54,507 nt of DNA from Macrostomum lignano (lineage: Eukaryota). A program made the translations under genes and the position numbers. Positions within the stretch are counted from its first letter, which is position 1. Every line of letters starts with the position of its first letter. A model generated the notes under the pieces. The model saw only the letters and a program-made list of their open reading frames with translations, searched no databases and was not told the DNA's origin. Positions 359-53,207 of this stretch are shown here, one piece after another. Where the stretch lies: positions 1 to 54,507 of the forward strand of contig NIVC01000429.1 of NCBI GenBank assembly GCA_002269645.1, in the 5' to 3' direction.

Positions 359-413
359 CTAAGGCGACCCCTACAACGTGAGAAAATGTTTGATTATTGG
401 ATTAATTTCTCAG

Positions 414-8076: not shown

Positions 8077-8407
8077 GCATGCACTCACTTTATCGCTCTA
8101 TCTGAATTGATGTACGCATGTGGGGGAGAGGAGGTTGACTTATCGATTTTAAGGTCTGGCCCTACACCTCGCGTCTTTTCCTACCCGTACCCGCATGCAC
8201 TCACTTTATCGCTCTATCTGAATTGATGTACGCATGTGGGGGAGAGGAGGTTGACTTATCGATTTTAAGGTCTGGCCCTACACCTCGCGTCTTTTCCTAC
8301 CCGTCCCCGCATGCACTCACTTTATCGCTCTATTTGAATTGATGTACGCATGTGGGGGAGAGGAGATTGACTTATTGATTTGAAGGTCTGCCCTACACCT
8401 CGCGTCT
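8077..8407. repeat. 116-bp tandem repeat, about 2.9 copies; diverged copy at about 7595-7715
   Basis: Units start at 8077, 8193 and 8309 (gcatgcactcactttatcgctcta...). Confidence 0.9.
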
Positions 8408-9281: not shown

Positions 9282-12200
9282 TCACTGTACCGGCAGGCCG
9301 CTGGGTTTGCCTGTAATCTCCTCTTTTAGCTTAGCGTAGAGACGGAAGCGCAACTGGGCGTATTCCTACGAGACAGCGGCGGGGGGCTTCTGACATTCAT
9401 TTCGGTGTACAGGGTCACGGTGACCTTAGCAACTGAGGATCTGGGAGGCTGGCCCAGCAACTGAGGATCTGGGAGGCTGGCCCAGCAACTGAGGATCTGG
9501 GAGGCTGGCCCAGCAACTGGGGATCTGGGAGGCTGGCCCAGCAACTGAGGATCTGGGAGGCTGGCCCAGCAACTGGGGATCTGGGAGGCTGGCCCAGCAA
9601 CTGAGGATCTGGGAGGCTGGCCCAGCAACTGAGGATCTGGGAGGCTGGCCCAGCAACTGAGGATCTGGGAGGCTGGCCCAGCAACTGGGGATCTGGGAGG
9701 CTGGCCCAGCAACTGAGGATCTGGGAGGCTGGCCCAGCAACTGGGGATCTGGGAGGCTGGCCCAGCAACTGAGGATCTGGGAGGCTGGCCCAGCAAGGAG
9801 GATCTGGGAGGCTGGCCCAGCAACTGAGGATCTGGGAGGCTGGCCCAGCAACTGAGGATCTGGGAGGCTGGTCCAGCAACTAATGATATGGGAGGCTGGC
9901 CCAGCAGCTGAGGATCTGGGAGGCTGGCCCAGCAACTGAGGATCTGGGAGGCTGGCCCAGCAACTGAGGATCTGGGAGGCTGGCCCAGCAACTGAGGATC
10001 TGGGAGGCTGGCCCAGCAACTGAGGATCTGGGAGACTGGCCCAGCAACTGAGGATCTGGGAGGCTGGCCCAGCAACTGAGGATCTGGGAGGCTGGCCCAG
10101 CAGCTGAGGATCTGGGAGGCTGGTCCAGCAACTGAGGATCTGGGAGGCTGGTCCAGCAACTAATGATATGGGAGGCTGGCCCAGCAACTGAGGATCTGGG
10201 AGGCTGGCCCAGCAACTGAGGATCTGGGAGGCTGGCCCAGCAACTGAGGATCTGGGAGGCTGGCCCAGCAACTGAGGATCTGGGAGGCTGGCCCAGCAAC
10301 TGAGGATCTGAGAGACTGGCCCAGCAACTGAGGATCTGGGAGGCTGGTCCAGCAACTGAGGATCTGGGAGGCTGGCCTAGCAACTGAGGATCTGAGAGAC
10401 TGGCCCAGCAACTGAGGATCTGGGAGGCTGGCCCAGCAACTGAGGATCTGGGAGGCTCATCCAGCAACTGAGGATCAGGGAGGCTGGCCTAGCAACTGAG
10501 GATCTGAGAGACTGGCCCAGCAACTGAGGATCTCTGGGAGGCTGGCCCAGCAACAGAGGATCTGGGAGGGTGATGGTGGCCCCAGCAACTGAGGATCTGG
10601 GAGGGTGATGGTGGCCCCAGCAACTGAGGATCTGGGAGGGTGATGGTGGCCCCAGCAACTGAGGATCTGGGAGGGTGATGGTGGCCCCAGCAACTGAGGA
10701 TCTGGGAGGGTGATGGTGGCCCCAGCAACTGAGGATCTGGGAGGGTGATGGTGGCCCCAGCAACTGAGGATCTGGGAGGGTGATGGTGGCCCCAGCAACT
10801 GAGGATCTGGGAGGCTGGCCAGCACCAAAGGCATGCGCTAGTGCACATTGCAGTGCTTTACCTTGAAGTCGAAGTGGATGCTGGATACGGAGGCCTGCAG
10901 CAGGGACCAGACTGACCAGAAGAAATGCGACATCAACGCGCCGTATTTGGCCTCCAGCAGTAGCGCCGCGTCCGCTTCGCTACCGGCGACGGCGTTGTTA
11001 GTCTCCGGCGCCGTTGCGACCTCAACGTCGTCGGCGACTGTGTCAGCGCCTGCGACGTCGCGACAGTCGCTGCTCTCCTGCGTGGGGAACAGGGGCACCT
11101 TGTGGTCGATCTCGGGCTCGCTGTACCAGCGCAGGTAGGAGCGCCAGAAGGTCAGCTGGGCCTCCGGGCTGGGGTAGCAGTCTGGGTGATAGGAGAAGTA
11201 CGGCCACTCGCTCGGCGTATAGTCGAGCGTCCACTCGTTGAAGAAGTTGCCAATGTCGAAGGCGCGCCAGTTGTAGCTGCAGTACTCGAAGTCGATCAGC
11301 TGCAGGCTGAAGCCGTGCTGTCTGGAGGCGTTGTCGAACTTCAGGATGTTGTCTGCGGGAGAGTCACAGCATACGCATGTGCGGAGTCTAGTCTACTATG
11401 TGAGTGTTCAGGGAATAGTTATTGGAGATTACCATGAGGAAGTTAAGGGAATTCTCATGAGGAAGTTAGGGGAATTCTCATGAGGAAGTTAGGGGAATTC
11501 TCATGAGGAAGTTGGGGGCAATTCCCATGAGGAAGTTAGGGGCAATTCCCATGAGGAAGTTAGGGGAGATTCCCATGAGGAAGTTAGGGGCAATTCCCAT
11601 GAGGAAGTTAGGGGCGATTCCCATGAGGAAGTTAGGGGAGATTCCCATGAGGAAGTTAGGGGCGATTCCCATGAGGAAGTTAGGGGCAATTCCCATGAGG
11701 AAGTTAGGGGCAATTCCCATGAGGAAGTTAGGGGCGATTCCCATGAGGAAGTTAGGGGCAATTCCCATGAGGAAGTTAGGGGCAATTCCCATGAGGAAGT
11801 TAGGGGCAATTCCCATGAGGAAGTTAGGGGCGATTTCCATGAGGAAGTTAGGGGCGATTCCCATGAGGAAGTTAGGGGAGATTCCCATGAGGAAGTTAGG
11901 GGCGATTCCCATGAGGAAGTTAGGGGCGATTTCCATGAGGAAGTTAGGGGCGATTCCTATGAGGAAGTTAGGGGCGATTCCTATGAGGAAGTTAGGGGCG
12001 ATTCCCATGAGGAAGTTAGGGGCGATTTCCATGAGAAAGTTAGGGGCGATTCCTATGAGGAAGTTAGGGGCAATTCCCATGAGGAAGTTAGGGGCGATTC
12101 CCATGAGGAAGTTAGGGGCAATTCCCATGAGGAAGTTAGGGGCGATTTCCATGAGGAAGTTAGGGGCGATTCCCATGAGGAAGTTAGGGGAGATTCCCAT

Positions 12201-15200
12201 GAGGAAGTTAGGGGCAATTCCCATGAGGAAGTTAGGGGCGATTTCCATGAGGAAGTTAGGGGCGATTCCTATGAGGAAGTTAGGGGCGATTCCATGAGGA
12301 AGTTAGGGGCGATTTCCATGAGAAAGTTAGGGGCGATTCCTATGAGGAAGTTAGGGGCGATTTCCATGAGAAAGTTAGGGGCGATTCCTATGAGGAAGTT
12401 AGGGGCGATTCCCATGAGGAAGTTAGGGGCAATTCCCATGAGGAAGTTAGGGGCGATTTCCATGAGGAAGTTAGGGGCGATTCCTATGAGGAAGTTAGGG
12501 GCGATTCCCATGAGGAAGTTAGGGGCGATTTCCATGAGAAAGTTAGGGGAATTCTCATGAGGAAGTTGGGGGCAATTCCATGAGGAAGTTAGGGGCAATT
12601 CCCATGAGGAAGTTAGGGGCGATTCTAAGGGGAGGAAAGGGTGATTCTTATTCCTATTAAAGACGCATTTACTATTTTACACATTGGAATGAAAATGTTG
12701 AGCTCCACTCACTCTCCTGCAAGTCGTTGTGACAGAACACCACGGGCGAACTCAGCTGATTGTAGAAGGCGTCTCTGAAAGACCAAGTCGGTTATTAGGG
12801 TATTTTTAATAAAATGATTTAGTGAAATCCATATACTAATTTGAGAGCTGCCATTTTAACTACTTAATTTAGTAGTATTTTCGCCTAGAATATACCGATA
12901 CTTTTACTTTAATTGAACATTCATTCATTCCAAACTGGTTACATCTTGAGCTTTTCCCCGCGTTTCTTTCATGTTTCTTCTGCTCTTTGCTTCTCCCCTC
13001 TCTCTGTTTATCCCCCTCTGCTTCTCCCCCTCTCTGCTTCTCCCCCTCTGCTTCTCCCCTCTGTTCTCCTCTCTCTCTGCTTCTCCCCTCTCTGCTTCTC
13101 CCCCTCTCTGCTTCTCCCCCTCTGCTTCTCCCCCTCTGTTCTCCTCTCTCTCTGCTTCTCCCCTCTCTGCTTCTCCCCTCTGTTCTCCTCTCTCTCTGCT
13201 TCTCCCCCTCTCTGCTTCTCCCCCTCTCTGCTTCTCCCCCTCTGTTCTCCTCTCTCTCTGCTTCTCCCCCTCTCTGCTTCTCCCCCTCTCTGCTTCTCCC
13301 CCTCTCTGCTTCTCCCCCTCTGCTTCTCCCCCTCTGTTCTCCTCTCTCTCTGCTTCTCCCCCTCTCTGCTTCTCCCCCTCTGTTCTCCTCTCTCTCTGCT
13401 TCTCCCCCTCTCTGCTTCTCCCCCTCTGTTCTCCTCTCTCTCTGCTTCTCCCCCTCTCTGCTTCTCCCCCTCTCTGCTTCTCCCCCTCTGTTCTCCTCTC
13501 TCTCTGCTTCTCCCCCTCTCTGCTTCTCCCCCTCTCTGCTTCTCCCCCTCTGCTTCTCCCCCTCTGTTCTCCTCTCTCTCTGCTTCTCCCCCTCTCTGCT
13601 TCTCCCCCTCTCTGCTTCTCCCCCTCTGTTCTCCTCTCTCTCTGCTTCTCCCCCTCTCTGCTTCTCCCCCTCTGCTTCTCCCCCTCTGCTTCTCCCCCTC
13701 TGTTCTCCCCCTCTCTGCTTCTCCCCCTCTGCTTCTCCCCCTCTGTTCTCCTCTCTCTCTGCTTCTCCCCCTCTGCTTCTCCCCCTCTGTTCTCCTCTCT
13801 CTCTGCTTCTCCCCCTCTCTGCTTCTCCCCCCTCTTCTTCTCCCCTCTGTTCTCCTCTCTCTCTGCTTCTCCCCCTCTCTGCTTCTCCCCCTCTCTGCTT
13901 CTCCCCTCTGCTTCTCCCCTCTCTGTTCTCCTCTCTCTCTGCTTCTCCCCCTCTCTGCTTCTCCCCCTCTCTGCTTCTCCCCCTCTGCTTCTCCCCCTCT
14001 GTTCTCCTCTCTCTCTGCTTCTCCCCCTCTCTGCTTCTCCCCCTCTGTTCTCCTCTCTCTCTGCTTCTCCCCCTCTCTGCTTCTCCCCCTCTGTTCTCCT
14101 CTCTCTCTGCTTCTCCCCCTCTCTGCTTCTCCCCCTCTCTGCTTCTCCCCCTCTGCTTCTCCCCCTCTGTTCTCCTCTCTCTCTGCTTCTCCCCCTCTCT
14201 GCTTCTCCCCCTCTGTTCTCCTCTCTCTCTGCTTCTCCCCCTCTCTGCTTCTCCCCCTCTGCTTCTCCCCCTCTGCTTCTCCCCCTCTGTTCTCCCCCTC
14301 TCTGCTTCTCCCCTCTGCTTCTCCCCCTCTGTTCTCCTCTCTCTCTGCTTCTCCCCCTCTGTTCTCCTCTCTCTCTGCTTCTCCCCCTCTGCTTCTCCCC
14401 CTCTCTGCTTCTCCCCCTCTGCTTCTCCCCCTCTGCTTCTCCCCCTCTGCTTCTCCCCCTCTCTGCTTCTCCCTCTCTCTGCTTCTCCCTCTCTCTGCTT
14501 CTCCCCCTCTCTGCTTCTCCCCCTCTGCTTCTCCCCTCTCTGCTTCTCCCCTCTGCTTCTCCATCTTTGCTTCTCCATCTCTGCTTCTCCATCTCTGCTT
14601 CTCCCCCTCTGCTTCTCCCCCTCTGCTTCTCCATCTCTGCTTCTCCCTCTCTGTTTCTAGTTTTGCAGTCCCTGTTGAATTCCCTCTACTTCTCCACTTC
14701 TACACTGATACCCATCCCTTGCCGCCTGCTCCCCCACCTGAGCCAGTCGATCTCCTCATGCACCCGGAAGTCCCGCAGGAAGCGGGCCACCGGGGTGGCA
14801 TTGAAGCCCGGCCGTGGCGGCGGCTCCTCCCGGTCGGTCTTGCCGCTGACAACCTCCTTCACGCTGCGCAGCCAGGACTGCATCATCTTGAACACGAACC
14901 GCGGCTCCTTGGACAGCGGCATCTCCAGGCGGTGCAGCCTGGCCAGGTGCTTGGAGATGATGCCGTGGATCAGCGGCTCGGCCATCTGCTGCCGACGCAA
15001 AGGCGCCGAGTTGGCCACGAACTCCTCGATTCGGCCGCCTTTGAAGACGCCGTACAGATGCGGGCCCATGCGCTTCTCGGACAGCAGGGCGAAGATGACG
15101 GAGTCCAGCACCACCGACTCGGCGTTGTTGCTGAGAATCTCGCCGAACACTCGAATCAGCACCCTGTTGGGCTGGCCCGCCTGCGGCTGCACCGAGTCGG

Positions 15201-18200
15201 CCAGGCTGGCCACGAATAAGTAGTTGCTGAGGCCGCCACTAAAGAGGAGCCGATATGTATAGAAAATTAGTATCTTCTGCCGTAAAAAAATAAAGTGACG
15301 ATTACGAGCTATTCTGCTTCTGGAGATTGTCAATTTAAATAATTGGCTGAAGCAAGGTTTAAAAAAGGACTGGACACAGACCGGAACGAGAATTCTCATT
15401 CAATCTACTCTACCTTAGTCTACTCGGAATCGATCTACTCTACCTTAGTCTACTCGGAATCGATCTACTCTACTTTAATCTACTCGCAACTGATCTACTT
15501 TACCTTAATCTACTTATAATCGATCTACTCTACTTTAATCTACTCGCAGCTGAACTTCTCTACCTTAATCTTCTCGGAACCGATCTACTCTACCTTAAAT
15601 CTACTCGGAACCGATCTACTCTACCTTAATCTTCTCGGAACCGATCTACTCTACCTTAGTCTACTCGGAACCGATCTACTCTACCTTAGTCTACTCGGAA
15701 CCGATCTACTCTACCTTAAATCTACTCGGAACCGATCTACTCTACCTTAGTCTACTCGGAACCGATCTACTCTACCTTAGTCTACTCGGAACCGATCTAC
15801 TCTACCTTAGTCTACTCGGAACCGATCTACTCTACCTTAGTCTACTCGGAACCGATCTACTCTACCTTAATCTACTCGGAACCGATCTACTCTACCTTAG
15901 TCTACTCGGAACCGATCTACTCTACCTTAATCTACTCGGAACCGATCTACTCTACCTTAGTCTACTCGGAACCGATCTACTCTACCTTAGTCTACTCGGA
16001 ACCGATCTACTCTACCTTAGTCTACTCGGAACCGATCTACTCTACCTTAGTCTACTCGGAACCGATCTACTCTACCTTAATCTACTCGGAACCGATCTAC
16101 TCTACCTTAATCTACTCGGAACCGATCTACTCTACCTAGTAAGCTATCTGAGAAATCAACACCGAGCCCAGCAGAGCTGGCACACCTGATCTCATCAAAC
16201 CGAACGCTGTCCACGTGAGCAGCCCAAGCGCCGCCCAGATACTGGGCACACAAACTCAATGCCTGCGCTTTCGTCAGCGGCTGCTCTTGCGACATATCCG
16301 GCACTGGTAGGAACAGTTCTGCTGAATCTAGGTCGAATGAAACTTCTTTTATATGATACTTATTTTAAAAGCCACGCACACTGCTAGGACGGTTGGCTTG
16401 GCTACGTTTTTATCGCACTGTGCCATTCACTCGTTTATCTGGACTCATGGGCTTAGATTGCTCACAAAAAGCAGAAACGGTAGAGTTCAAGACTTAGCAG
16501 CAATCTGGTAGAGACAAAGCGCGCTTGCCACCCCAAAATCGGGTTGCCCAATTGCTCATGCAGCAGAGTTTTCTTTCATTTCCACGTGTACACACAGGAG
16601 ACAGACGGGCTTCAGTAACAGACTATGCCAGGTTGGTCATAAAAACTATCGAATAATTTCTGCTGATTTTCTGACAAAAAAAGTTACAAAAAATCTTAAC
16701 CGGTTAATTCAGCATTGATTGATTTTTATTCTCTAGTATCATGTTGAACTATCCACATGTCCACATGCACCATGCACTGCTTAGACCAAGCTCTTCCAGG
16801 GGGTTTATCTGGTTTTACTCTGGTGAGTCAGCTTCATGGAGTGTTAAACATTTTCGGCCTGGAGTCAACAAAGTTGTATCGTTTCCGGAATTTTTTTAGT
16901 TTTGAATTCAGCAGCGTCACAGATAAGAAATTTGAGGGGCTGAGCAACAGTACGGCTTGCTGAGCACAGCGAGCACCCCCCATTGAGAATACGCAAGGAC
17001 AGGGCAGCTATGCGAAAAACATGACTAAATACAGATTGTAGCCACTCAAAGCCTTTTGCACAGCCTGTGTCCACCTTCTACTGTTTTCTCCCAGCCTGTG
17101 TCCGCCTTTCTCCTGTTTTCTCCCAGCCTGTGTCCGCCTTTCCCCTGTTTTCTCACAGCCTGTGTCCGCCTTTCCCCTGTTTTCTCCCAGCCTGTGTCCG
17201 CCTTTCCCCTGTTTTCTCTCAGCCTGTGTCCGCATTTCCCCTGTTTTCTCCCAGCCTGTGTCCGCCTTTCCCCTGTTTTCTCACAGCCTGTGTCCGCTTT
17301 TCCCCTGTTTTCTCACAGCCTGTGTCCGCATTTCCCCTGTTTTCTCCCAGCCTGTGTCCGCCTTCTACTGTTTTCTCCCAGCCTGTGTCCGCCTTTCCCC
17401 TGTTTTCTCTCAGCCTGTGTCCGCATTTCCCCTGTTTTCTCTCAGCCTGTGTCAGCATTTCCCCTGTTTTCTCCCAGCCTGTGTCCGCATTTCCCCTGTT
17501 TTCTCCCAGCCTGTGTCCGCCTTTCTCCTGTTTTCTCCCAGCCTGTGTCCGCCTTTCCCCTGTTTTCTCACAGCCTGTGTCCGCCTTTCCCCTGTTTTCT
17601 CCCAGCCTGTGTCCGCCTTTCCCCTGTTTTCTCTCAGCCTGTGTCCGCATTTCCCCTGTTTTCTCCCAGCCTGTGTCCGCCTTTCCCCTGTTTTCTCACA
17701 GCCTGTGTCCGCCTTTCCCCTGTTTTCTCACAGCCTGTGTCCGCATTTCCCCTGTTTTCTCCCAGCCTGTGTCCGCCTTCTACTGTTTTCTCCCAGCCTG
17801 TGTCCGCCTTTCCCCTGTTTTCTCTCAGCCTGTGTCCGCATTTCCCCTGTTTTCTCTCAGCCTGTGTCAGCATTTCCCCTGTTTTCTCCCAGCCTGTGTC
17901 CGCATTTCCCCTGTTTTCTCTCAGCCTGTGTCAGCATTTCCCCTGTTTTCTCCCAGCCTGTGTCCGCATTTCCCCTGTTTTCTCTCAGCCTGTGTCAGCA
18001 TTTCCCCTGTTTTCTCCCAGCCTGTGTCCGCATTTCCCCTGTTTTCTCCCAGCCTGTGTCCGCCTTTCCCCTGTTTTCTCACAGCCTGTGTCCGCCTTTC
18101 CCCTGTTTTCTCCCAGCCTGTGTCCGCATTTCCCCTGTTATCTCACAGCCTGTGTCCGCATTTCCCCTGTTTTCTCCCAGCCTGTGTCCGCCTTTCCCCT

Positions 18201-19896
18201 GTTTTCTCCCAGCCTGTGTCCGCTTTTCCCCTGTTTTCTCACAGCCTGTGTCCGCATTTCCCCTGTTTTCTCTCAGCCTGTGTCCGCATTTCCCCTGTTT
18301 TCTCCCAGCTTGTGTCCGCCTTTCCCCTGTTTTCTCCCAGCCTGTGCCCGCCTTTCCCCTGTTTTCTCCCAGCCTGTGTCCGCCTTTCCCCTGTTCTCTC
18401 AGCCTGTGTCCACCTTCTACTGTTTTCTCCCAGCCTGTGTCCGCCTTTCCCCAGTTTTCTCCCAGCCTGTGTCCGCCTTTCCCCTGTTCTCTCAGCCTGT
18501 GTCCACCTTCTACTGTTTTCTCCCAGCCTGTGTCCGCCTTTCCCCAGTTTTCTCCCAGCCTGTGTCCGCATTTCCCCTGTTTTCTCACAGCCTGTGTCCG
18601 CATTTCCCCAGTTTTCTCCCAGCCTGTGTCCGCATTTCCCCTGTTTTCTCACAGCCTGTGTCCGCATTTCCCCTGTTTTCTCACAGCCTGTGTCCGCATT
18701 TCCCCAGTTTTCTCCCAGCCTGTGTCCGCATTTCCCCTGTTTTCTCACAGCCTGTGTCCGCATTTCCCCTGTTTTCTCACAGCCTGTGTCCGCATTTCCC
18801 CAGTTTTCTCCCAGCCTGTGTCCGCATTTCCCCTGTTTTCTCACAGCCTGTGTCCGCATTTCCCCTGTTTTCTCACAGCCTGTGTCCGCCTTTCCCCTGT
18901 TTTCTCCCAGCCTGTGTCCACTTTTCCCCTGTTTTCTCCCAGCCTGTGTCCGCTTTTCCCCTGTTTTCTCCCAGCCTGTGTCCACTTTTCCCCTGTTTTC
19001 TCCCAGCCTGTGTCCGCTTTTCCCCTGTTTTCTCCCAGCCTGTGTCCACTTTTCCCCTGTTTTCTCCCAGCCTGTGTCCGCCTTTCCCCTGTTTTCTCCC
19101 AGCCTGTGTCCGCTTTTCCCCTGTTTTCTCCCAGCCTGTGTCCGCCTTTCCCCTGTTTTCTCTCGCCTGCTCCAACTCGCCAGTTCTATCTCGCCAGTTC
19201 CATTACGATAAGACAAGAATTTACAAAGAAGCAGTGAGAAAGTCAGCAGGTTGCTTTGGCAAACTATCTGCTGTAACAATTGATTCCATATCTTCTTCCG
19301 GTCTGTCACTGTCTCATTTCTTTCTGGAACTCACCTTTTGAAATTGAGCCACACTTGAGCAGAGCAGTAAAACAAACATGGAACAGAAAACAGAAAACTG
19401 CAGCAAAACTAAAGCAAAGTTCCTAATCATACCTATTGATATTTTCTGCTTGGAGAGGCCCAGTTGCGTCACAGTGAATCAAGATTTAAACTCGCAGATT
19501 ATCCTGCAATTGCTCGGTACAGCTCTCGGGTGACTGGTTGGTTCCAACACACCCCAACGGAGCTAAGACCAGTTTTGCAGTCCAAATGTTCATCAAGTTA
19601 ATATTTCAAACACAGAAAGTAAAAAGCAACAGAGAACACTGCAACAGCGTCACCCACCCAGAGTACAACCTGACGGGCACAATGCTAATCTCTGAGCTGT
19701 CTGCCGTGGCCCAAGCCTTGCTGAGGCAGGTGCGGCAGTGGTGCCTCAATCGGTCCATGCTGAACTCGTTCTCCATCTTCTGCTGATCTGCAGACTTGGC
19801 TGAGCTGCTGCTCACGGTGCTGATGCAGCCACTGTTGCTGCTGTTGCCTCCGCCATCACTGATTGATCGACGGAGTTCATCAGCGGCAGGTAGCAT
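9282..19896 (-). CDS. chk: Choline/ethanolamine kinase; exons 19670-19896 (alternative first coding exon A), 14738-15238, 12713-12774, 10862-11352, 9282-9365
   Basis: [10 protein letters not shown]-loop region, [22 protein letters not shown], Brenner motif [14 protein letters not shown] (split by an intron), choline kinase motif [34 protein letters not shown], and C-terminal [10 protein letters not shown]. All GT-AG junctions are phase-consistent (2,2,1,0). The symbol denotes family level only. Confidence 0.93.
9427..10820. repeat. 28-bp minisatellite (ctgaggatctgggaggctggcccagcaa) with a 33-bp variant block at about 10560-10800; fills chk intron 9366-10861
   Basis: About 48 units, visible directly. 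Confidence 0.97.
11432..12630. repeat. 24-bp minisatellite (gaggaagttaggggcRattcccat); fills chk intron 11353-12712
   Basis: About 50 units; source of the MRKLGAIP repeat ORFs. Confidence 0.97.
12975..14655. repeat. CT-rich near-homopyrimidine array (ctctgcttctcccc variants); fills chk intron 12775-14737
   Basis: About 1.7 kb, almost only C/T on the + strand with sparse G. Confidence 0.97.
15400..16138. repeat. 30-bp minisatellite (ctactctaccttagtctactcggaaccgat); chk intron 15239-16185
   Basis: About 24 units, degenerate at the left edge and homogeneous to the right. Confidence 0.95.
16186..16295 (-). CDS. chk: Alternative first coding exon B of choline kinase ([36 protein letters not shown])
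   Basis: Matches the conserved choline kinase N-terminal C..YLGGAW helix. Phase-2 donor AG|gtgtgc fits the 15238 acceptor. Acceptor cctaccag lies 8 nt before the ATG. Confidence 0.8.
17060..19165. repeat. 32-bp minisatellite (cagcctgtgtccgcMtttcccctgttttctcc) between chk alternative exons B and A
   Basis: About 65 units with occasional 29-bp deletion variants. Confidence 0.97.
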
Positions 19897-19949
19897 CACA
19901 ATCCTTTGTCTTGGCGCGTTTACTGCAGAAACCGGAGTGGTAAACAATG

Positions 19950-21058
19950 CTGATTCCACTCTGATCTAACCCGATTCCACACTGATCTAAAAATCATTCC
20001 ACTCTGATCTAATCTCATTCCACTCTGATCTAATCTCATTCCACTCTGATCTAATCTCATTCCACACTGATCTAATATCATTCCACTCTGATCTAATCCT
20101 ATTCCACACTGATCTAATCTTATTCTACTCCGATCTAATCTTAGTTCACTCTGATCTAATCTGATTCTACACTGATCTAATCTCATTCCACACTGATCTA
20201 ATCTCATTCCACTCTGATCTAATCTCATTCCACTCTGATCTAACCCGATTCCATACTGATCTAATCTCATTCCAGTCTGATCTAATCTCATTCCACTCTG
20301 ATCTAACCCGATTCCATACTGATCTAATCCCATTCCACTCTGATCTAACCCGATACCATACTGATCTAATCTCATTCCACTCTGATCTAACCCGATTCCA
20401 TACTGATCTAATCTCATTCCAGTCTGATCTAATCTCATTCCACTCTGATCTAATCTCATTCCACTCTGATCTAATCTCATTCCACTCTGATCTAATCTCA
20501 TTCCACTCTGATCTAAGCCTATTCCACTCTGATCTAATCTGATTCCACTCTGATCTAATCTCATTCCAGTCTGATCTAAGCCTATTCCGCTCTGATCTAA
20601 TCTGATTCCACTCTGATCTAATCTCATTCCACTCTGATCTAAGCCTATTCCACTCTGATCTAATCTGATTCCACTCTGATCTAATCTCATTCCACTCTGA
20701 TCTAAGCCTATTCCGCTCTGATCTAATCTGATTCCACTCTGATCTAATCTCATTCCAGTCTGATCTAATCTGATTCCACATTGACCTAATCTCATTCCAC
20801 TCTGATCTAATCCTATCCCACACTGATCCAATCTCATTCCACTCTGATCTAATCCGATTCTAATTTGATCTAATTTGATCTAATCTGATTCCACTCTGAT
20901 CTAATCCGATTCCACTCTGATCTAATCTGATTTCACACTGATCTAATCTGATTCCACTCTGATATAATCCTTTTCCACTCTGATCTAATCTCATTCCACT
21001 CTGATATAATCCTTTTCCACTCTGATCTAATCTCATTCCACTCTGATCTAATCTCATC
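19950..21058. repeat. 21-bp minisatellite (ttccactctgatctaatctca) directly upstream of chk exon A
   Basis: About 52 units; begins about 25 nt beyond the 19923 acceptor AG. Confidence 0.96.
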
Positions 21059-21754
21059 CCCCCAGCGCAATCTGTTTTCACTGAACCCTATTGGAGACAT
21101 GAAATAATGCCGACTGGACTTTATTAAACAGGGCTCAGACGAAGCAGCTGGCTTTTAAGTTCATATATTACGTAATTATTATAAGCCCAATCACAATGTG
21201 ACAAAGGGGTTCGGCACAAGTTATTAATAGCCGTCTATTAGAGGGAATATTTGACCGAATTTCGAGCAGAAGGATAAACAAATAAATGTCTGCTGTGCAT
21301 TGGCAATCTTGATTGGTCAATTATAAAGAGGTGTAAAAACAGATACCTGTAAATGCCAACAATATAAAAGCACATTTCTTGTAATAAAACTGATAATGCA
21401 GGTCATGAAAATGCAATTATAAATTTCAGATATTAAAAGTGGGCAGATAAAGAACTAAGCAATAATTTGGAGCGATATGTTAGGGAAAAAACGATCTGAA
21501 TTCGCAATTTAGCCTACTACTAGTAAAAGCAAACAAATATTGGCACAATTTTTTGCGCAAACGGCTAAAAATACACTGAGAAGAACGTACTCGATATTAG
21601 AAAAAATAATTATGTATAATAACAGTAATCTTTTGTACAACGGGTGAAAAGCGAGGCTGGGCAGCCCTTGGCAAGGATAAAATTAAAACAAAATCAAATA
21701 ATTTTAAATCCGACACAAAGTACACACAGTCACAAAGAAAGACACAGAGATTAA

Positions 21755-24700
21755 TTAGTTCAACACGCCGCTCAGCCGACGATGCAGCGAGCGACTTCTT
21801 GGCGCGTCTCCGTCCTCCTCCTCCTCCTCGTCGGCGTCGTGGTCGGCGTCGCTAAACAAGTCGGAGTCGTCGACGCCGTCGTCGTCGCTGCTGGCGGCTG
21901 GCCGACGCCGGTGCTGGCGAAGGAAGCGGCGGTGGCGCTGAAGGGAGCCGCCGCCTTCCTGGTCGGCGCGGTCTCGACGCTCGAAATGCGGCTCGTCGTC
22001 GAGGCTGCCGTAGGGACCCGGCGAGGCTGCGGAGTCGCGGAGATGCTGCGGCTGCTGCTCGTCCAGGCCGGCTGTGCGTTATGGTGGGGCACGAAATGAC
22101 AGCTCACTGATTCAGTATGACAGCTCACTGACCCAGCATGACAGCTCAATGACTCTGTATGACAGCTCACTGACCCAGCATGACAGCTCACTGACTCTGT
22201 ATGACAGCTCACTGACTCTGTATGACAGCTCACTGACCCAGCATGACAGCTCACTGACTCAGAATGTCAGCTCACTGACTCAGTATGACAGCTCACTGAC
22301 TCAGAATGTCAGCTCACTGACTCAGAATGTCAGCTCACTGACTCAGAATGTCAGCTCACTGACTCAGTGTGACAGCTCACTGACTCAATATGACAGCTCA
22401 CTGACTCTATATGACAGCTCACTGACCCAGCATGACAGCTCACTGACTCAATATGACAGCTCACTGACTCTATATGACAGCTCACTGACCCAGCATGACA
22501 GCTCACTGACCCAGCATGACAGCTCACTGACTCTATATGACAGCTCACTGACCCAGCATGACAGCTCACTGACTCAGTGTGACAGCTCACTGACTCAGTA
22601 TGACAGCTCACTGACTCAGCATGACAGCTCACTGACTCTGTATGACAGCTCACTGACTCAGTGTGACAGCTCACTGACTCAGCATGACAGCTGACTGACT
22701 CAGTATGACAGCTCACTGACTCAGCATGACAGCTGACTGACTCAGTATGACAGCTCACTGACTCAGCATGACAACTGACTGACTCAGTATGACAGCTCAC
22801 TGACTCAGCATGACAGCTCACTGACTCTGTATGACAGCTCACTGACTCAGTGTGACAGCTCACTGACTCAGTGTGACAGCTCACTGACTCAGCATGACAG
22901 CTGACTGACTCAGTATGACAGCTCACTGACTCAGCATGACAGCTGACTGACTCAGTATGACAGCTCACTGACTCAATATGACAGCTGACTGACTCAGTAT
23001 GACAGCTCACTGACTCAATATGACAGCTGACTGACTCAGTATGACAGCTCACTGACTCAAGATGAGAGCTCTATCAGTCAATAAGAGCGGTCACTCATAA
23101 GATAGAACCTAACACTGTATACCTGTAAGCTTCCACTTTAGTCAACGATGCTTACTCAGCAATAATGAATCACAAAATTTAAGTGATTTAAGTGTCTTCC
23201 TCAAGGACTCAAATTGTTCCAAGGTGGATCGAGAATCGAACCCCCGACCTTTCAGTGGTGAGTCCAACGCTCTAACCACTAGGCTACAACCCCCTAAAAC
23301 TATGCAGTTAGCGAAATGCTAGTAAGCGCATTGCACACCTCGCTTCCAAGCGAAAGCGGCGTCCATAGCAACCGGCTGCTGGGCTGCAGTTGGTCCACGC
23401 CTACCGAACTGCGGCTGGCCGAATTGAGCCGCAGCAGCCGCGGCCGCAGCGGCAGCGGCCGCACCGCCGCCGCCGCCGCCGTATCCCATCAGCAGCTGCT
23501 GCTGCTGGGCCCGAGCTCGCGACTTGGCCGCCTGAGTGCGCACCTTGTGGCCGGACATTGACAAAGACTCGTCGCTTCTAGTTCGGTATAATCTTTGTTG
23601 AGGCGGCTGCTGCGAGTTCAACAGATGGTGGTGATGAGGCTGAGCAGGAGGCTGGACAGTGCCGGGTTGGCGAGGAGCGGCAGCATAGACCGGGGCATTG
23701 CCAATATGGCCGTGCCATTCGCGAAAGCCGTGCTCAATGCAGGACTGCGGATTCAGCTGGCAGGTGCAGTTGCTGGAGGCCATGTACTGCGGGCGGGATG
23801 GTGAGTGAGGAAGCTGGATGATGGGTGATGAAGAGCAACTGTCATGAGCAGCATCTATAACCGATTTTCATAGGTCAGAGATGGCTCAGGGGCGATTCTC
23901 ATAGAATAGAGATGGCTCAGGGGCGATTCTCATAGAATATAGATGGCTCAGGGGCGATTCTCATAGAATAGAGATGGCTCAGGGGCGATTCTTATAGATG
24001 GCTCAGGGGCGATTCTCATAGAATAGAGATGGCTCAGGGGCGATTCTCATAGAATAGAGATGGCTCAGGGGCGATTCTTATAGATGGCTCAGGGGCGATT
24101 CTTATAGAATAGAGATGGCTCAGGGGCGATTCTCATAGAATAGAGATGGCTCAGGGGCGATTCTTATAGATGGCTCAGGGGCGATTCTTATAGAATAGAG
24201 ATGGCTCAGGAGCGATTCTTATAGATGGCTCAGGGGCGATTCTTATAGAATAGAGATGGCTCAGGGGCGATTCTTATAGAATAGAGATGGCTCAGGGGCG
24301 ATTCTCATAGAATATAGATGGCTCAGGGGCGATTCTTATAGATGGCTCAGGGGCGATTCTTATAGAATAGAGATGGCTCAGGAGCGATTCTTATAGATGG
24401 CTCAGGGGCGATTCTTATAGATGGCTCAGGGGCGATTCTTATAGAATAGAGATGGCTCAGGGGCGATTCTCATAGAATAGAGATGGCTCAGGGGCGATTC
24501 TCATAGAATATAGATGGCTCAGGGGCGATTCTTATAGAATAGAGATGGCTCAGGGGCGATTCTTATAGAATAGAGATGGCTCAGGGGCGATTCTTATAGA
24601 ATAGAGATGGCTCAGGGGCGATTCTTATAGAATAGAGATGGCTCAGGGGCGATTCTCATAGAATAGAGATGGCTCAGGGGCGATTCTTATAGATGGCTCA

Positions 24701-27700
24701 GGGGCGATTCTTATAGAATAGAGATGGCTCATGGGCGATTCTAATAGAATAGAGGTGGCTCAGGGGCGATTCTCAAAGAATAGAAATGACTCAGGGGCGA
24801 TTCTCATAGAATATAGATGGCTGAGAGGCGATTCCTATAGAATAGAGGCGGCTCAGGGGCGATTCTCAAAGAATATAGATGGCTCAGGGGCGATTCTCAT
24901 GGAATAGAGATGACTCAGGGGAGATTCTCATAGAATATAGATGGCTCAGGGGAGATTCTCATAGAAAAGAGATGGCTCAGGGGAGATTCTCATAGAAAAG
25001 AGATGGCTCATGGGCGATTCTAATAGAATAGAGATGGCTCAGGGGCGATTCTCATAGATTAGAGATGGCTCAGGGGCGATTCTCAAAGAATAGATATGGG
25101 TCAGGGGCGATTCTCATAGAATAGAGATGGCTCAGGGGCGATTCTCAAAGAATAGATATGGGTCAGGGGCGATCAAACTGACTAAGCTATTGCAATGATA
25201 GTTTAATTGCTTGAGAAGCAGCACAGCACTTACCGACGGTCCCTGCCGGAGGTTGCCGCCCAGATCCGTATAGAAGGTGACCGGGTGGTGCTGGCTTGCC
25301 ACCTGGGCCGGCACAACCGGAGCCGGAGCCACGGCCGACGAAGTCTGCTGCTGCTGTTGCTTCTTTCCGCCCGGCTGATTTTTTCCGCTGCCGCCCCTAC
25401 GGAAAAGCGAAAGCACCGACCATTTGAGCAGTTTAGATTTAGATTTCTTCTTTTGCTGCTGTTGTTGTTGCTGTTGCTGCTGCTGCTGGGGCAGCATCGG
25501 AGGCGTGAGGGTGCGCGTCGGCTGCTGCTTAGGATGCGGCGGAGGCGGCGGAGGCGAAGGCTGAGCAGCTTCGGGCTGCGGCATCATCAGCTGGAGCACC
25601 GCGTCGGTGCCAGCGGAGCCGTGGCCGCTGTCGGACGGTCCGCCAGGATGCTGCTGATGATGCAGCTGATGATGAAGCATCTGCTGTTGCTGCTGCTGTT
25701 GATGATGATGCAGCATCGCAGCTGCGGCGGCGGCAGACCCGCCAGAGCTGACAGACACGGAGCCGGCAGTGGCCAGGCTAAGCAGCAGCTGGACGACATC
25801 CGAGTAGCCTTTGCGCTTCGCGACGTCCACCGGGGACTCGCCCTGCTGGTTGCGCTGGCTCGGGTCGGCCCGGCAGTCCAGCAGCATGCCGGCGATTCGT
25901 CGGCGACGCAGCGCGGCGGCCACGTGCAGCGCCGTGTCGCCGTTTTTATTGCGACAGTTGACCCGGACAACTGGCCCGGCGCTTAATAGGATGCGCGCCG
26001 CGCCTGGATTGCGGATGCGCGCTTTTCAGTGTAAGTTCAGCATTAAAAAATATGAAGTCAATAGTCACGGAAGAGCTGTGAGTACCCTGGTCCCACAATC
26101 AACGCTAATGATTCTGCCCATTCCGGTGACTCCAGAGCAGCACATACGTACACACGCTAGTAGTACTAAGTATTTGACGAGGCATTTTGGCTTAATAAGA
26201 CAGTCATAGTTACTCCTGCCGTATACCCAAAGTTGCGTTAATTTTGCTTTAGGGTTTCTTTTACATGTAAGTCGCATTTTTGGCCCAAAACTAAGCCGCA
26301 TTTTTGTTAAAACTAAGCCGCATTTTTGTTAAGTCGCACAGCCGACCGAATTTTGAAGGTTGCGTATGTATGCTTCAGAAGTATGAATTGCACGACAAAC
26401 TCCAACCAAATGGCTGAGGCCTTGCAACAAAGCACAGGGAGAGGTGGGCTTACGCCCCCCGACTGCCGGCAATCCCGCGCGGCTGTCCCCTGTCCTTCCT
26501 CCGCCCTGCGGAGGGCCCTGCTTGGACTCAACCGCAGGGACATCAGGGCGGTGACCATGGCCCTCTCGGCTCATGGCTGTTTTGCCAGGCATCGTTACCT
26601 CCAGGAGAAAATCTACAGCGAGGAATGCCCTTTCTGCTCTGCCTCTCCGGTGTCAAGAACGCGGAGCACTTTATCTGTGAATGCCCCGTCTTTACTCAGG
26701 ACAGGACAGGCCCACTACCTCGGCCCAAACCCGGACCTCTCCGACGTTTTCAGGCCCGAGAATCTCTGCCAGCTCGTCCGCTACCTAAGGGCTACTGGGC
26801 GAGCGAACATCCACCTCCTGGACTCTCCGGAGGGAGACCGCGCTGCGGACACCGGCACCACTAACTGCTCGTGGTCGCCTCCCCGCTGCATCCAGATGCC
26901 CGGAGCCCCCCTGCAGCTGAGTCAAGTAGGTCAGAGGCCTTGCAAGGAATCGAACTAGGGGTCGTGGCGCTTGAGAGTCTAAAAGTGTTTACCGTTGGCT
27001 ACTTCCTACCTAGGCACTTTAATTCTGACGACCCCCCCCCCCAGAGGCCTCACCTGGCCTGCCGTAGCGAGCAGCCGTGTGCAGCGCTGTGTCGCCGAAT
27101 GTGTTCTGCCTATTGGGATCGGCGCCAGCGTGCAGCAGGGCCCGGGTGCACTCGTTGTGCCCGTTCTGCACGGCCAAGTGCAGCGGAGTGGCCTGGGCTC
27201 GATTCTCGGCGTTGGCGTCGCTGCCGGCCCGGCATAGCAGGTCGACGGTGCGCGAGTAGCCCTGCCAGGCGGCATCGTGCAACGCCGAATTGCCGCCACG
27301 ACGTTCGTCGCGCGCGTTCGTATCGGCGCCGGCGTCAACCAGCAGCTGGGCGAGCTGGGCGTGGCCATGCCGGGCCGCCAGCTGGAGCGGCGTCACGCCG
27401 GATGCGTCGCCAGCGCTGACTGGCGCGCCGGCGTCCAGCAGCAGACGGCAGATTTGGACGTGGCCGCCGGCCGCAGCCAAGTGAAGGGCAAGACGGCCTT
27501 CCTGGTGGGAAGGATTGGGGAGATTCTCAACATTAGCTTAGTGCAGGGTCGGCAGACTTCAGCATAACACCCGGCCGACCCGGCCGGCTGGCAGGGGGCC
27601 CAACCAATGTAAGTCGCAAAAATGCCCACCCAAAAATACAGACGTACTACTAATTAGATGACGAGACATTTAGCTTTAGTAAGATACTCATAGTTACTCC

Positions 27701-29472
27701 TGTCGTTTACCTGCGTAAAACATTGCTTAAGGGTTTCTTTCACAGGTACGTCGCATTTTTGGTCAAAAAGTAACTCGCACGGCCAGTGTTAATCAGGGGG
27801 GTTGCGCATGTATGTATCCGGCCCTCGAGTCCTTTGAAAATTCGCTCAAGGTTTGTCTCTTCAGCTCCCTTCGAAAAGTTTGCCATTCCCTGGCTTAGTG
27901 TGTTCAATTTGGGGCTGCGGACGCTGCCGCAAGTCAAGGTGACAGGCCACTGAGGCAATCATCCCTGGGAACGCACGCAGGGTGTACAGCAGTCCTGACT
28001 TTCTCATGGTCAGGTGTAAACACTGTGCCTTGGCGGTTGGCCCTCTTCACGGGCTTGAATAGCACTACAAGCACCTAGGCCAATTTTACCGGGCGATTCT
28101 CACAGGTAGCTAAGCTATTAACTGAGCGATTCTCACAGGTAGCTAAGCTGGCGATTCTCACAGGTAGCTAAGCTGGCGATTCTCATAGGTAGCTAAGCTA
28201 ATAACTGGGCGATTCTCAGAGGAAGCTAAGCTAATAACTGGGCGATTCTCACAGGAAGCTAAGCTAATAACTGGGCGATTCTCATAGGTATATAAGCTAA
28301 TAACTGAGCGATTCTCACAGGTAGCTAAGCTAATAACTGAGCGATTCTCACAGGTAGCTAAGCTAATAACTGGGCGATTCTCACAGGTAGCTAAGCTAAT
28401 AACTGGGCGATTCTCACAGGTAGCTAAGCTAATAACTGGGCGATTCTCACAGGTAGCTAAGCTAATAACTGGGCGATTCTCACAGGTAGCTAAGCTAATA
28501 ACTGGGCGATTCTCACAGGTAGCTAAGCTAATAACTGGGCGATTCTCACAGGTAGCTAAGCTAATAACTGGGCGATTCTCACAGGTAGCTAAGCTAATAA
28601 CTGGGCGATTCTCACAGGTAGCTAAGCTATTAATAACTGGGCGATTCTCACAGGTAGCTAAGCTAATAACTGAGCGATTCTCACAGGTAGCTAAGCTAAT
28701 AACTGAGCGATTCTCACAGGTAGCTAAGCTAATAACTGGGCGATTCTCACAGGTAGCTAAGCTAATAACTGAGCGATTCTCACAGGTAGCTAAGCTGGCG
28801 ATTCTCATAGGTAGCTAAGCTAATAACTGGGCGATTCTCACAGGTAGCTAAGCTGGCGATTCTCATAGGTAGCTAAGCTAATAACTGGGCGATTCTCACA
28901 GGTAGCTAAGCTGGCGATTCTCATAGGTAGCTAAGCTAATAACTGGGCGATTCTCACAGGTAGCTAAGCTAATAACTGGGCGATTCTCATAGGTATATAA
29001 GCTAATAACTGAGCGATTCTCACAGGTAGCTAAGCTAATAACTGGGCGATTCTCACAGGTAGCTAAGCTAATAACTGAGCGATTATCACAGGTAGCTAAG
29101 CTAATAACTGAGCGATTATCACAGGTAGCTAAGCTGGCGATCCTCATAGGTAGCTAAGCTAATAACTGGGCGCTTCTCACAGAAGGTAGCTAAGCTCCCC
29201 ACATTTAACTACTGAGGTACTAACTTGACAATTCTTATTGATATAGCTGCCACTATTTGCAGAGTGAAGTTCAGGAGTATTTGAAAAATAGCAATCAAAA
29301 ATGGTTTGAATGAATACTTAAAAAAGATAGCCATTTTAAATTTTAAAACTATTAACTAGCTACAAACCTTATCAGGTTCGATTGGTGCCTTGGCTCTGAG
29401 TAGTTCACCAACAAGGCCCACTTGACCTTGTCCTGCTGCATTGCGCAATTGTTCAGCAAGTGAGGCTTCCAT
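21755..29472 (-). CDS. ANKRD6: Ankyrin repeat protein, ANKRD6/diversin/Diego-like; exons 29368-29472, 27054-27501, 25234-26003, 23339-23786, 21755-22071 (695 aa)
   Basis: [17 protein letters not shown]...PDK|[14 protein letters not shown]...[20 protein letters not shown]...[19 protein letters not shown]...[12 protein letters not shown]...[11 protein letters not shown] parallels vertebrate ANKRD6 repeat for repeat ([42 protein letters not shown], recalled from memory). Phases 0,1,0,1 are consistent; the CDS sums to 2088 nt. Confidence 0.85.
22095..23070. repeat. 21-bp minisatellite (tgacagctcactgactcagYa); ANKRD6 last intron
   Basis: About 46 units starting about 23 nt from the acceptor. Confidence 0.96.
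23100..23292 (-). mobile_element. tRNA-derived SINE with a CORE-like segment
   Basis: Reverse complement ggggttgtagcctagtggttagagcg...ggttcgattctc (A and B boxes) followed by gagtccttgaggaagacacttaa, similar to the CORE-SINE motif gtgaccttgggcaagtcacttaa. Confidence 0.6.
23875..25172. repeat. 31-bp/24-bp minisatellite (gatggctcaggggcgattctYata[gaataga]); ANKRD6 intron 23787-25233
   Basis: About 44 units of two interspersed lengths. Confidence 0.96.
26150..26345. repeat. Dispersed repeat, related copy at about 27605-27790; possible non-autonomous DNA transposon remnant
   Basis: taagacagtcatagttactcctgccg...agggtttctttYaca..gtcgcatttttgg is shared by both introns flanking ANKRD6 exon 2; it contains recurrent taagtcgca/taagccgca motifs. 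Confidence 0.5.
26380..26900 (+). mobile_element. Degenerate 3' fragment of a non-LTR retrotransposon ORF2 (C-terminal Cys/His knuckle), antisense within an ANKRD6 intron
   Basis: [28 protein letters not shown]...EECPFC then, after a frameshift, [11 protein letters not shown], then [22 protein letters not shown]. This matches the typical LINE C-terminal LTGH...C..C...ET.EH....CP pattern. Confidence 0.7.
28090..29185. repeat. 33-bp (and 25-bp) minisatellite (gggcgattctcacaggtagctaagctaataact); ANKRD6 intron 1
   Basis: About 35 units; source of the [11 protein letters not shown] repeat ORFs. Confidence 0.96.
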
Positions 29473-51939: not shown

Positions 51940-52021
51940 CTGCAGTGAGTGCCGGGCGCTGGACGAGGCAAACTGATAGTCCAGCCGTAGCCGCCCGCTG
52001 GGCCGCCAGCTTTTTATCCAC

Positions 52022-53207
<1,186 letters not shown>

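What the first reader, a model, noticed from the sequence alone, without database searches (positions are those of the whole stretch)
11432..29185. Three otherwise different intronic minisatellites share a GGGCGATTCYCA core in the same orientation
The 24-mer at 11.4-12.6 kb (aggggcgattcccatgag), the 31-mer at 23.9-25.2 kb (aggggcgattctcatag) and the 33-mer at 28.1-29.2 kb (tgggcgattctcacag) share about 12 nt while the rest of each unit differs. All lie in introns of minus-strand genes (sense TGRGAATCGCCC). A chance 12-nt match among three short units is unlikely. The core may be a transposon terminus or a protein-binding or recombinogenic motif that nucleates amplification together with whatever flanking sequence is adjacent. 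A solo ggggcgattcc occurs at 45574.
Basis: partly seen in the sequence, partly recalled or inferred. Interest (0 to 1): 0.7.

Follow-up and report, generated by a model that had tools for sequence, protein, structure and literature searches.

The report
Related minisatellite arrays in neighbouring introns
Three (probably four) tandem-repeat arrays sitting in introns of neighbouring genes share a 12-15 base stretch far more often than chance allows, most likely because they are diverged sister copies of one repeat family rather than because the shared stretch is a special signal; this is an ordinary kind of repeat evolution in an unusually repeat-packed locus.

Summary
Arrays A (11427-12625, 24 nt), B (23862-25173, 31/24 nt) and C (28091-29196, 33/25 nt) all carry GGGCGATTCYCA on the + strand. 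Three of 20 array units sharing such a 12-mer arose in 2 of 3000 shuffles.

"Otherwise different" is overstated:
- The units align collinearly without gaps: head GGGGCGATTCTCAY plus a purine-rich tail AGGWAGCTMAG.
- All three have a 24-25 nt base unit.
- C's tail resembles the tails of A, B and a fourth array, D (51257-51480), at p about 0.01-0.08 each. This is moderate evidence, not decisive.

Nothing supports a transposon end or a binding or recombination signal:
- Flanks do not align, and there are no inverted repeats around the arrays.
- Solo cores are not enriched outside the arrays.
- No tRNA or Rfam family matches, and the strands have no unusual hairpin potential.
- Inside each array the most polymorphic position lies within the core.

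Best reading: sister arrays of one minisatellite family, seeded locally and then expanded and homogenised independently. About 35% of this window is minisatellite, and several other local families exist.

The host genome and its relatives could not be reached, so genome-wide enrichment and orthologous empty sites remain untested. Interest is low to moderate.

The parts
11427..12625 (+). Array A: about 50 units of 24 nt, TTAGGGGCGATTCCCATGAGGAAG. It fills a roughly 1.34 kb intron of a minus-strand choline-kinase-like gene. Edge units carry TCT (GGGGAATTCTCAT, GGGCGATTCTAA, GGGTGATTCTTAT) instead of the interior CCC.
23862..25173 (+). Array B: about 44 units of 31 nt, AGGGGCGATTCTCATAGAATAGAGATGGCTC, mixed with 24-nt short units (…TTATAGATGGCTC). 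It fills a roughly 1.44 kb intron of a minus-strand ankyrin-repeat gene.
28091..29196 (+). Array C: about 35 units of 33 nt, GGGCGATTCTCACAGGTAGCTAAGCTAATAACT, with 25-nt short units. Units 5-6 (28207-28272) carry the A-like tail …GAGGAAGCTA. The array lies in an AT-rich stretch upstream of the ankyrin exon, probably an intron.
51257..51480 (+). Array D, a probable fourth member: 5 units of 44 nt. The segment GATTCTGTACGGGTAGCTTTAAGC aligns to C's GATTCT-CACAGGTAGC--TAAGC. It lies between two minus-strand ORFs; one (50481-51212) matches insect chemoreceptor families, the other (51503-52060) has no Pfam match.
45574..45585 (+). Solo GGGGCGATTCCT, equal to a variant of the A core. Not distinguishable from chance.
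27518..27541 (+). Solo GGGAGATTCTCAACATTAGCTTAG, 560 bp left of array C and next to the ankyrin exon's 3' splice site. It looks C-like in head and tail, but its overall identity (18/27) is matched by three other random windows.

Best explanation
A, B and C, and probably D, are diverged sister arrays of one minisatellite family.

Proposed history:
- A progenitor repeat of about 24-25 nt had a head GGGGCGATTCTCAY and a purine-rich tail of roughly AGGWAGCTMAG.
- Copies of it were seeded into several introns of neighbouring minus-strand genes.
- Each array then expanded and was homogenised on its own, by unequal exchange and replication slippage.
- Each fixed its own substitutions and unit-length changes: +7 nt in B-long, +8 nt in C-long, about +20 nt in D.
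- The 12-15 nt "core" is simply the part of the progenitor that has been least overwritten. It need not have a function.

Shown:
- The arrays exist and share the head beyond chance.
- The units are collinear and in the same orientation.
- Identity within an array is higher than between arrays.
- No transposon hallmarks were found.
- The core is the most polymorphic part of each array.

Inferred:
- Common descent.
- The seeding step.
- The direction of the unit-length changes.

Not resolved: how the seeds moved. Candidates are a mobile carrier, re-insertion of excised repeat circles, or local ectopic repair.
For: Shared head is not chance:
- 2 of 3000 shuffles reach the observed three-way sharing; p = 0.011 for a three-way 9-mer.

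Unit-level local alignments:
- B-C 17, A-C 16, A-B 14-15 and C-D 14 out of 24. Against the 18 unrelated arrays, on either strand, the maximum is 10-13.
- In an all-against-all run of 462 comparisons (median 8, 99th percentile 15), these four pairs are among the top 11.

Alignments extend past the core:
- A GGGCGATTCCCATGAGGAAGTTA against C unit 5 GGGCGATTCTCA-GAGGAAGCTA is 20/23. A B variant against a C variant is 20/22.
- Nine representative units align with no internal gap.
- Base unit lengths are 24, 24 and 25 nt.

Tails alone, with registers of unrelated arrays as the null:
- A-C p = 0.013-0.037; B-C p = 0.013-0.08; C-D p = 0.04-0.08.

Other points:
- A's edge units carry the B/C-type TCT, as expected if edges keep older states.
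- TRF within-array matches are 87-93%, while consensus units of different arrays agree on little beyond the head. This is the pattern of concerted evolution.
- The same window offers a local precedent. A dispersed element carries 3 units of a 21-mer at 35864 and 19 units at 38081, followed by about 170 nt of shared flank.
- Other neighbouring arrays also fall into families: 9428/10546 and 178/1838/3036.
- Spread of satellite repeats to new euchromatic loci, followed by local expansion through unequal exchange, is documented in Drosophila (PMC7403614).
Against: - Homology beyond the core is only moderately supported. With a column-permutation null, the tail tests give A-C p = 0.054, C-D p = 0.062, B-C p = 0.46 and A-B about 1. 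The tails are all purine-rich, which inflates chance matches.
- A and B share nothing outside a 15-nt block. A functional core would give exactly that pattern.
- The flanks give no help. B's right flank shares the 10-mer CTAAGCTATT with C at p = 0.013 for one test, about 0.1 after allowing for the eight flanks examined. B's left flank gives p = 0.23.
- No carrier element, target-site duplication or empty site was seen.
- Only one 54.5 kb window was available. Four arrays in one orientation has p = 0.125 and means little.
Confidence: 0.55

Rival explanations
1. The core is a cis-acting signal, such as a protein-binding, break-prone or recombinogenic motif. It triggers tandem amplification of itself plus whatever lies next to it, so arrays with unrelated tails arise independently wherever the motif occurs. 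This would be an invertebrate analogue of the classic shared minisatellite core.
For: - Identity is concentrated in one 12-15 nt block. The A-B tails are unrelated.
- Sharing is far above chance.
- All four arrays have one orientation relative to transcription.
- On the left side, A, B and C each begin at or within a few bases of the head.
Against: - Inside each array the most polymorphic column lies in the core: 30% in A, 50% in B, 30% in C. The tails are nearly invariant.
- Only 10 of 49 A units keep the exact core.
- Solo cores are not enriched outside the arrays.
- Hairpin potential is not unusual: z ranges from -1.8 to +0.5.
- C's tail resembles the tails of A, B and D.
- Eighteen other arrays in the same window expanded without this core.
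- No paper in the library holds the motif in such a role.
Confidence: 0.15
2. The core is the terminus or subterminal repeat of a transposon (MITE, foldback or Helitron type). The arrays grew at insertion sites from that end.
For: - Elements that carry their own short tandem repeats exist in this very window (35864 and 38081).
- Such elements are known in bivalves and insects (PMC3879986; PMC4079207 and PMC7492417 were listed, and only their titles and abstract openings were seen).
Against: - The flanks of A, B, C and D share nothing.
- No terminal inverted repeats.
- The introns holding A and B contain only about 60-80 nt besides the array on each side, which looks like native intron.
- No tRNA or Rfam match, so no sign of a SINE origin.
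- No solo element copies in the window.
Confidence: 0.1
3. Chance resemblance among many short units in a repeat-dense window.
For: - There are 22 arrays in 54.5 kb.
- Pairs of unrelated units share up to 10-mers.
- A pair sharing a 12-mer has p of about 0.03.
- A bacterial plasmid's iterons share a 16-mer with A purely by coincidence.
Against: The observed three-way sharing arises in 2 of 3000 shuffles. The family pairs top the empirical distribution of 462 comparisons. All are in the same orientation and the same register.
Confidence: 0.04

Closest known systems
Dispersed euchromatic satellite families that spread to new loci and then expand locally, such as Rsp-like and 1.688 on the Drosophila X (PMC7403614); a Tribolium paper on satellite spread in gene-rich regions (PMC11610590) was seen by title and abstract opening only
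   Same: Several nearby euchromatic, gene-embedded arrays with related units. Each array is homogenised on its own. There are no transposon hallmarks at the array edges. Related arrays cluster locally.
   Different: Units here are 24-44 nt rather than roughly 100-360 nt. Divergence between arrays is so large that only a 12-15 nt head is clearly shared. Spread, circles and microhomology junctions were not shown here.
Human hypervariable minisatellites that share a G-rich core (Jeffreys 1985). This is recalled from my own knowledge, and the papers listed were not read.
   Same: Different minisatellite loci share a 10-15 nt core while the rest of the unit differs. The same question arises: is the core a signal or a sign of shared ancestry?
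   Different: The core sequence is unrelated (GGGCGATTCYCA against GGGCAGGAXG). Here the tails keep some similarity. The core is the most polymorphic part of each array. Hypervariability and hotspot association are untested.
Tandem-repeat-containing MITEs and related elements: DTC84/pearl (PMC3879986, abstract read). Tetris (PMC4079207) and oyster Helentron-borne repeats (PMC7492417) were seen by title and abstract opening only.
   Same: Short tandem repeats that are seeded at many loci and can expand. A direct example of this type lies in the same window (35864 and 38081).
   Different: A, B, C and D have no conserved flanking cassette, inverted repeats or target-site duplication.

Membership tests
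Dispersed minisatellite / satellite family (paralogous arrays under concerted evolution) | Head-to-tail arrays with units of 10-100 nt at two or more separate loci | tested here: met
   TRF reports arrays at 11427-12625, 23862-25173, 28091-29196 and 51257-51480
Dispersed minisatellite / satellite family (paralogous arrays under concerted evolution) | Units from different loci are homologous along the whole unit, not only in a short motif | tested here: inconclusive
   The alignment is collinear and gap-free, and variant pairs reach 20/23 and 20/22. Tail-only tests give p of 0.013-0.08 for C against A, B and D. A composition-preserving null gives 0.05-0.46, and A-B shows nothing.
Dispersed minisatellite / satellite family (paralogous arrays under concerted evolution) | Identity within an array exceeds identity between arrays | tested here: met
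   Within arrays TRF gives 87-93% matches. Consensus units of different arrays share only 9-12 nt exactly and differ over most of the tail.
Dispersed minisatellite / satellite family (paralogous arrays under concerted evolution) | Further copies elsewhere in the genome | not testable with these tools
   The host genome and its relatives are absent from the collections. The metagenome hits are unrelated prokaryotic repeats.
Core-sharing hypervariable minisatellites (Jeffreys type) | A short core shared by units that are otherwise unrelated | tested here: inconclusive
   The core is shared, but the tails are not clearly unrelated.
Core-sharing hypervariable minisatellites (Jeffreys type) | Core resembles the G-rich, chi-like consensus GGGCAGGAXG | tested here: not met
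   The core read from the sequence is GGGCGATTCYCA. The consensus it is compared with is recalled from memory.
Core-sharing hypervariable minisatellites (Jeffreys type) | Length hypervariability and association with recombination hotspots | not testable with these tools
   Only a single haplotype is available.
Transposon-borne tandem repeats (MITE, foldback, Helitron) | Conserved non-repeat flanks shared by copies | tested here: not met
   Self-BLAST and flank alignments find nothing for A-D. The same test does detect another element in the window.
Transposon-borne tandem repeats (MITE, foldback, Helitron) | Terminal inverted repeats or target-site duplications around the array | tested here: not met
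   No inverted repeat pair brackets any of the four arrays.
tRNA-derived SINE | tRNA-like head with A and B boxes | tested here: not met
   ARAGORN finds 0 genes. Rfam finds 0 matches at gathering score.

The most novel reading that the evidence does not exclude
GGGCGATTCYCA is the recognition site of a host or transposon-derived DNA-binding or nicking factor. That factor provokes local break repair and so seeds and expands minisatellites in transcribed introns in one orientation. This would be a sequence-specific driver of the extraordinary minisatellite load of this genome.
Probability: 0.08. Interest if true: 0.7.

Novelty: new member of a known kind. Interest (0 to 1): 0.3.

Why it matters
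If the family reading is right, the locus is a compact example of how minisatellites bud off, land in neighbouring short introns, inflate them about tenfold (from roughly 130 nt to 1.3-1.4 kb) and then drift apart until only a short head betrays their kinship. That helps in annotating repeat-rich genomes. It also warns against reading shared "cores" as functional motifs.

The more striking fact is the locus itself. About 35% of a gene-dense 54.5 kb window is minisatellite, with a different array in almost every intron.

Tried and rejected
- tRNA or SINE origin of the core. I recalled a resemblance to the B-box GGTTCGATTCC. ARAGORN and Rfam found nothing.
- Protein look-ups to reach the host genome or orthologous introns. 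The choline kinase exon gave no hits. Calcineurin B gave at best 83% identity, from scattered phyla. No relative is available, so I did not spend the third search or the contig look-ups.
- Scan of metagenome contigs for two cores at minisatellite spacing. It returned 16 loci, all unrelated prokaryote-type repeats: pentapeptide-repeat coding sequence, cyanobacterial-type repeats and plasmid iterons. My prior expectation of about 0.7 chance hits was wrong, because it ignored how common tandem arrays are. The viral contig scan gave 0 hits.
- L001, whose 22-nt array shares the 16-mer TAGGGGCGATTCCCAT with A. It is a bacterial Rep3 plasmid with iterons. This is coincidence.
- My own stronger claim that the units are clearly homologous throughout. 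I had to soften it after the tails-only permutation test was not significant.
- B's flanks as decayed C-type units. The left flank gave p = 0.23. The right flank gave p = 0.013 before correction. This is suggestive only.
- The solo unit at 27518 as progenitor of C. It is not exceptional by overall identity.
- Whole-array Smith-Waterman scores. They are confounded by accumulation over many units and by low-complexity CT-rich arrays.
- Literature search for the motif. There were only incidental hits, in a coronavirus CRISPR-Cas13b paper and two bacterial papers.
Full report
**What is there**

The window is a gene-dense animal locus, probably arthropod. It holds:
- a Ras-association/PDZ protein on the + strand;
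- exons of a choline kinase, an ankyrin-repeat protein and an insect-type chemoreceptor on the minus strand;
- a calcineurin-B-like EF-hand gene on the + strand (ORFs).

TRF reports about 22 distinct minisatellite arrays, which together cover about 35% of the 54,507 bases. The three flagged arrays are as described:
- A, 11427-12625: 24 nt, about 50 copies.
- B, 23862-25173: 31 nt, about 44 copies, with 24-nt short units.
- C, 28091-29196: 33 nt, about 35 copies, with 25-nt short units.

From the splice sites visible, A fills an intron of about 1.34 kb in the choline kinase gene. B fills an intron of about 1.44 kb in the ankyrin gene. Only about 60-80 nt of non-repeat intron remains on each side. 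C lies upstream of an internal ankyrin exon with a 3' splice site at about 27502. It is therefore probably in the next intron, but this is inferred.

**Is the shared core real and more than chance?**

Yes.
- GGGCGATTCYCA occurs 47 times. Every hit is on the + strand and inside A, B or C.
- Among 20 array consensus units, three units sharing a 12-mer with one free position arose in 2 of 3000 composition-preserving shuffles.
- A three-way shared 9-mer among 21 units has p = 0.011, and a pair sharing a 12-mer has p = 0.03.

Two caveats apply. In A only 10 of 49 units carry the exact core, and the commonest variant is GGGGCAATTCCC. Unrelated units in this window share up to 10-mers by chance.

**Are the units "otherwise different"?**

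Evidence for similarity beyond the core:
- I aligned one-unit-long windows against whole arrays. The scores were B-C 17, A-C 16, A-B 14-15 and C-D 14 out of 24. D is a fourth array, the 44-mer at 51257-51480. Against the 18 unrelated arrays, on either strand, the maximum was 10-13.
- In an all-against-all version of 462 comparisons (median 8, 99th percentile 15), these four pairs sit in the top 11.
- The best alignments run past the core:
  - A GGGCGATTCCCATGAGGAAGTTA against C unit 5 GGGCGATTCTCA-GAGGAAGCTA, 20/23.
  - B variant GGGCGATTCTCATA-GAATATA against C variant GGGCGATTCTCATAGGTATATA, 20/22.
  - C GATTCT-CACAGGTAGC--TAAGC against D GATTCTGCACGGGTAGCTTTAAGC.
- Nine representative units align with no internal gap as a head GGGGCGATTCTCAY plus a tail of about AGGWAGCTMAG.
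- The base unit lengths are 24, 24 and 25 nt. B-long, C-long and D carry an extra 7, 8 and about 20 nt.
- A's edge units carry the B/C-type TCT rather than the interior CCC.

Evidence that limits the claim:
- When the core is removed, a column-permutation null gives A-C p = 0.054, C-D p = 0.062, B-C p = 0.46 and A-B about 1. The tails are all purine-rich, which inflates chance matches.
- A second null, built from registers of unrelated arrays, gives A-C p = 0.013-0.037, B-C p = 0.013-0.08 and C-D p = 0.04-0.08. A-B again shows nothing.
- B's right flank shares the 10-mer CTAAGCTATT with C at p = 0.013 uncorrected. Its left flank gives p = 0.23.

I therefore treat homology beyond the core as likely, with C as the hub, but not proven.

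Transposon terminus:
- The flanks of A-D share nothing by self-BLAST or MAFFT.
- No inverted repeats bracket the arrays.
- No tRNA or Rfam family matches.

Widespread binding or recombinogenic motif:
- Outside the arrays there are only 3 sites with up to 2 mismatches, against about 5 expected for the whole window.
- A profile of the base unit finds no solo copy better than E = 5.
- The solos at 45574 and 27518 cannot be separated from chance.

Constraint on the core:
- In each array the most polymorphic column lies inside the 12-mer: A, the G of the CpG, 30%; B, the Y, 50%; C, the second G, 30%.
- The tails are almost invariant.

Structure:
- Two to three units of each array, folded as single-stranded DNA on either strand, are no more stable than shuffles. 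The z-scores range from -1.8 to +0.5.

**Context that favours a family-by-descent reading**

The same window shows that repeats here travel and then expand.
- A dispersed element has 3 units of a 21-mer at 35864 and 19 units at 38081, followed by about 170 nt of shared flank.
- A 116-nt unit has a solo copy at 7599-7714 next to its 2.9-copy array at 8077.
- Another dispersed repeat flanks the ankyrin exon, at 26160-26300 and 27644-27779.
- Other neighbouring arrays also share parts of their units: 9428/10546 and 178/1838/3036.

Spread of satellite repeats to new euchromatic loci, with later local expansion by unequal exchange, is documented. Circular DNA and microhomology-mediated repair are the suggested routes (PMC7403614). 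Tandem repeats carried and seeded by MITE-type elements are documented too (PMC3879986).

**Attempts to reach other genomes**

- The choline kinase exon found no relatives.
- Calcineurin B found many eukaryotic hits, but none above 83% identity, and they came from scattered phyla. Neither the host nor a close relative is available, so orthologous introns could not be compared.
- A metagenome scan for two cores at minisatellite spacing returned 16 loci. All are unrelated prokaryote-type repeats.
- The most similar locus, L001, shares a 16-mer with A. It is a Rep3 plasmid with iterons, ParM, KorA and UmuDC-type genes. These hits show only that any 12-mer recurs in some array somewhere.
- No paper in the library holds the motif in a relevant context.

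**Verdict**

The best explanation (confidence about 0.55) is that A, B, C and probably D are sister arrays of one minisatellite family. They were seeded into neighbouring introns, then expanded and homogenised independently. The "core" is the least overwritten remnant of their common unit.

A cis-acting core that nucleates arrays remains possible (about 0.15). It is disfavoured by the variability pattern, the lack of solo enrichment and the residual tail similarity. A transposon terminus (about 0.1) and chance (about 0.04) are less likely.

This is a new member of a known kind of repeat behaviour. The extreme minisatellite load of the locus is the more unusual feature.

Noticed in passing
window 1-54507, especially 9428-21057: About 35% of this gene-dense window is minisatellite, in roughly 22 arrays with units of 14-116 nt, up to 111 copies and up to 3.3 kb. 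Several different arrays (9428, 11427, 12983, 15403, 17061) follow one another through the stretch that holds the choline-kinase-like exons. The two introns whose splice sites I read (A's and B's) would be only about 130-140 nt long without their arrays.
   Followed up: partly
window 35864-36093 and 38081-38620: A dispersed element carries its own 21-nt minisatellite, CATTTTRGCGCCRCAGGCAST. One copy has about 3 units and the other about 19. Both are followed by about 170 nt of shared sequence with G/C-run palindromes (GGGGGGACATGTCCCCC). The two copies lie on either side of the calcineurin-B-like exon at 37608-38036.
   Followed up: partly
window 26160-26300 and 27644-27779: Two copies, 77% identical, of a short dispersed repeat ending in a 22-nt mini-array (TAAGCCGCATTTTTGGCCAAAAC). 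They lie on either side of the ankyrin exon at 27019-27501.
   Followed up: no
window 7599-7714 and 8077-8407: A 116-nt unit is present as a solo copy (87% identical) about 360 bp upstream of its own 2.9-copy tandem array.
   Followed up: no
window 28103-29153: Array C carries 30 copies of CAGGTAG or TAGGTAG on the + strand, out of 39 in the whole window against about 10 expected. From memory, these heptamers are the TAGteam/Zelda-type motif of insects. This was not tested, and the match may be incidental.
   Followed up: no
window 178-3309; 19953-21057, 41613-44964 and 53500-53872: Other arrays may also form local families. The C-rich units at 178, 1838 and 3036 (inverted) share CCACCCCAC-type stretches. 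The 21-mer at 19953 and the 36-mer at 41613 share CTCTGATCT, and the array at 53500 (inverted) scores 14/21 against the 19953 array. Low complexity makes these uncertain.
   Followed up: partly
window 11427-12625: The only CpG of the A unit lies in the core and has decayed in many units: CG to CA in about 14 units and CG to AG in 4 (plus 4 edge-type GGGGAATT units), out of 49. In A and B-long the 3' half of the core forms a short inverted repeat with the start of the tail (ATTCT-CAT-AGAAT in B, TTCC-CATGA-GGAA in A). This gives no significant folding.
   Followed up: partly
L001 1-608 and 1496-1602 (metagenome contig Ga0157364_1012850): This is a bacterial plasmid fragment. Its Rep3-family initiator gene is flanked by a 22-nt iteron array and, on the other side and inverted, a 61-nt array. 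Both contain TAGGGGCRATTCCCA, which is identical over 16 nt to array A of this animal locus. I judge this a coincidence.
   Followed up: yes
window 37608-37840: The calcineurin-B-like N-terminal exon is at most 83% identical to any protein in the 5.8-billion-sequence collection, and the best hits come from scattered phyla (flatworm, psyllid, nematode, fish, coral). The choline kinase exon found no relative at all. The source organism seems poorly represented in public data.
   Followed up: partly
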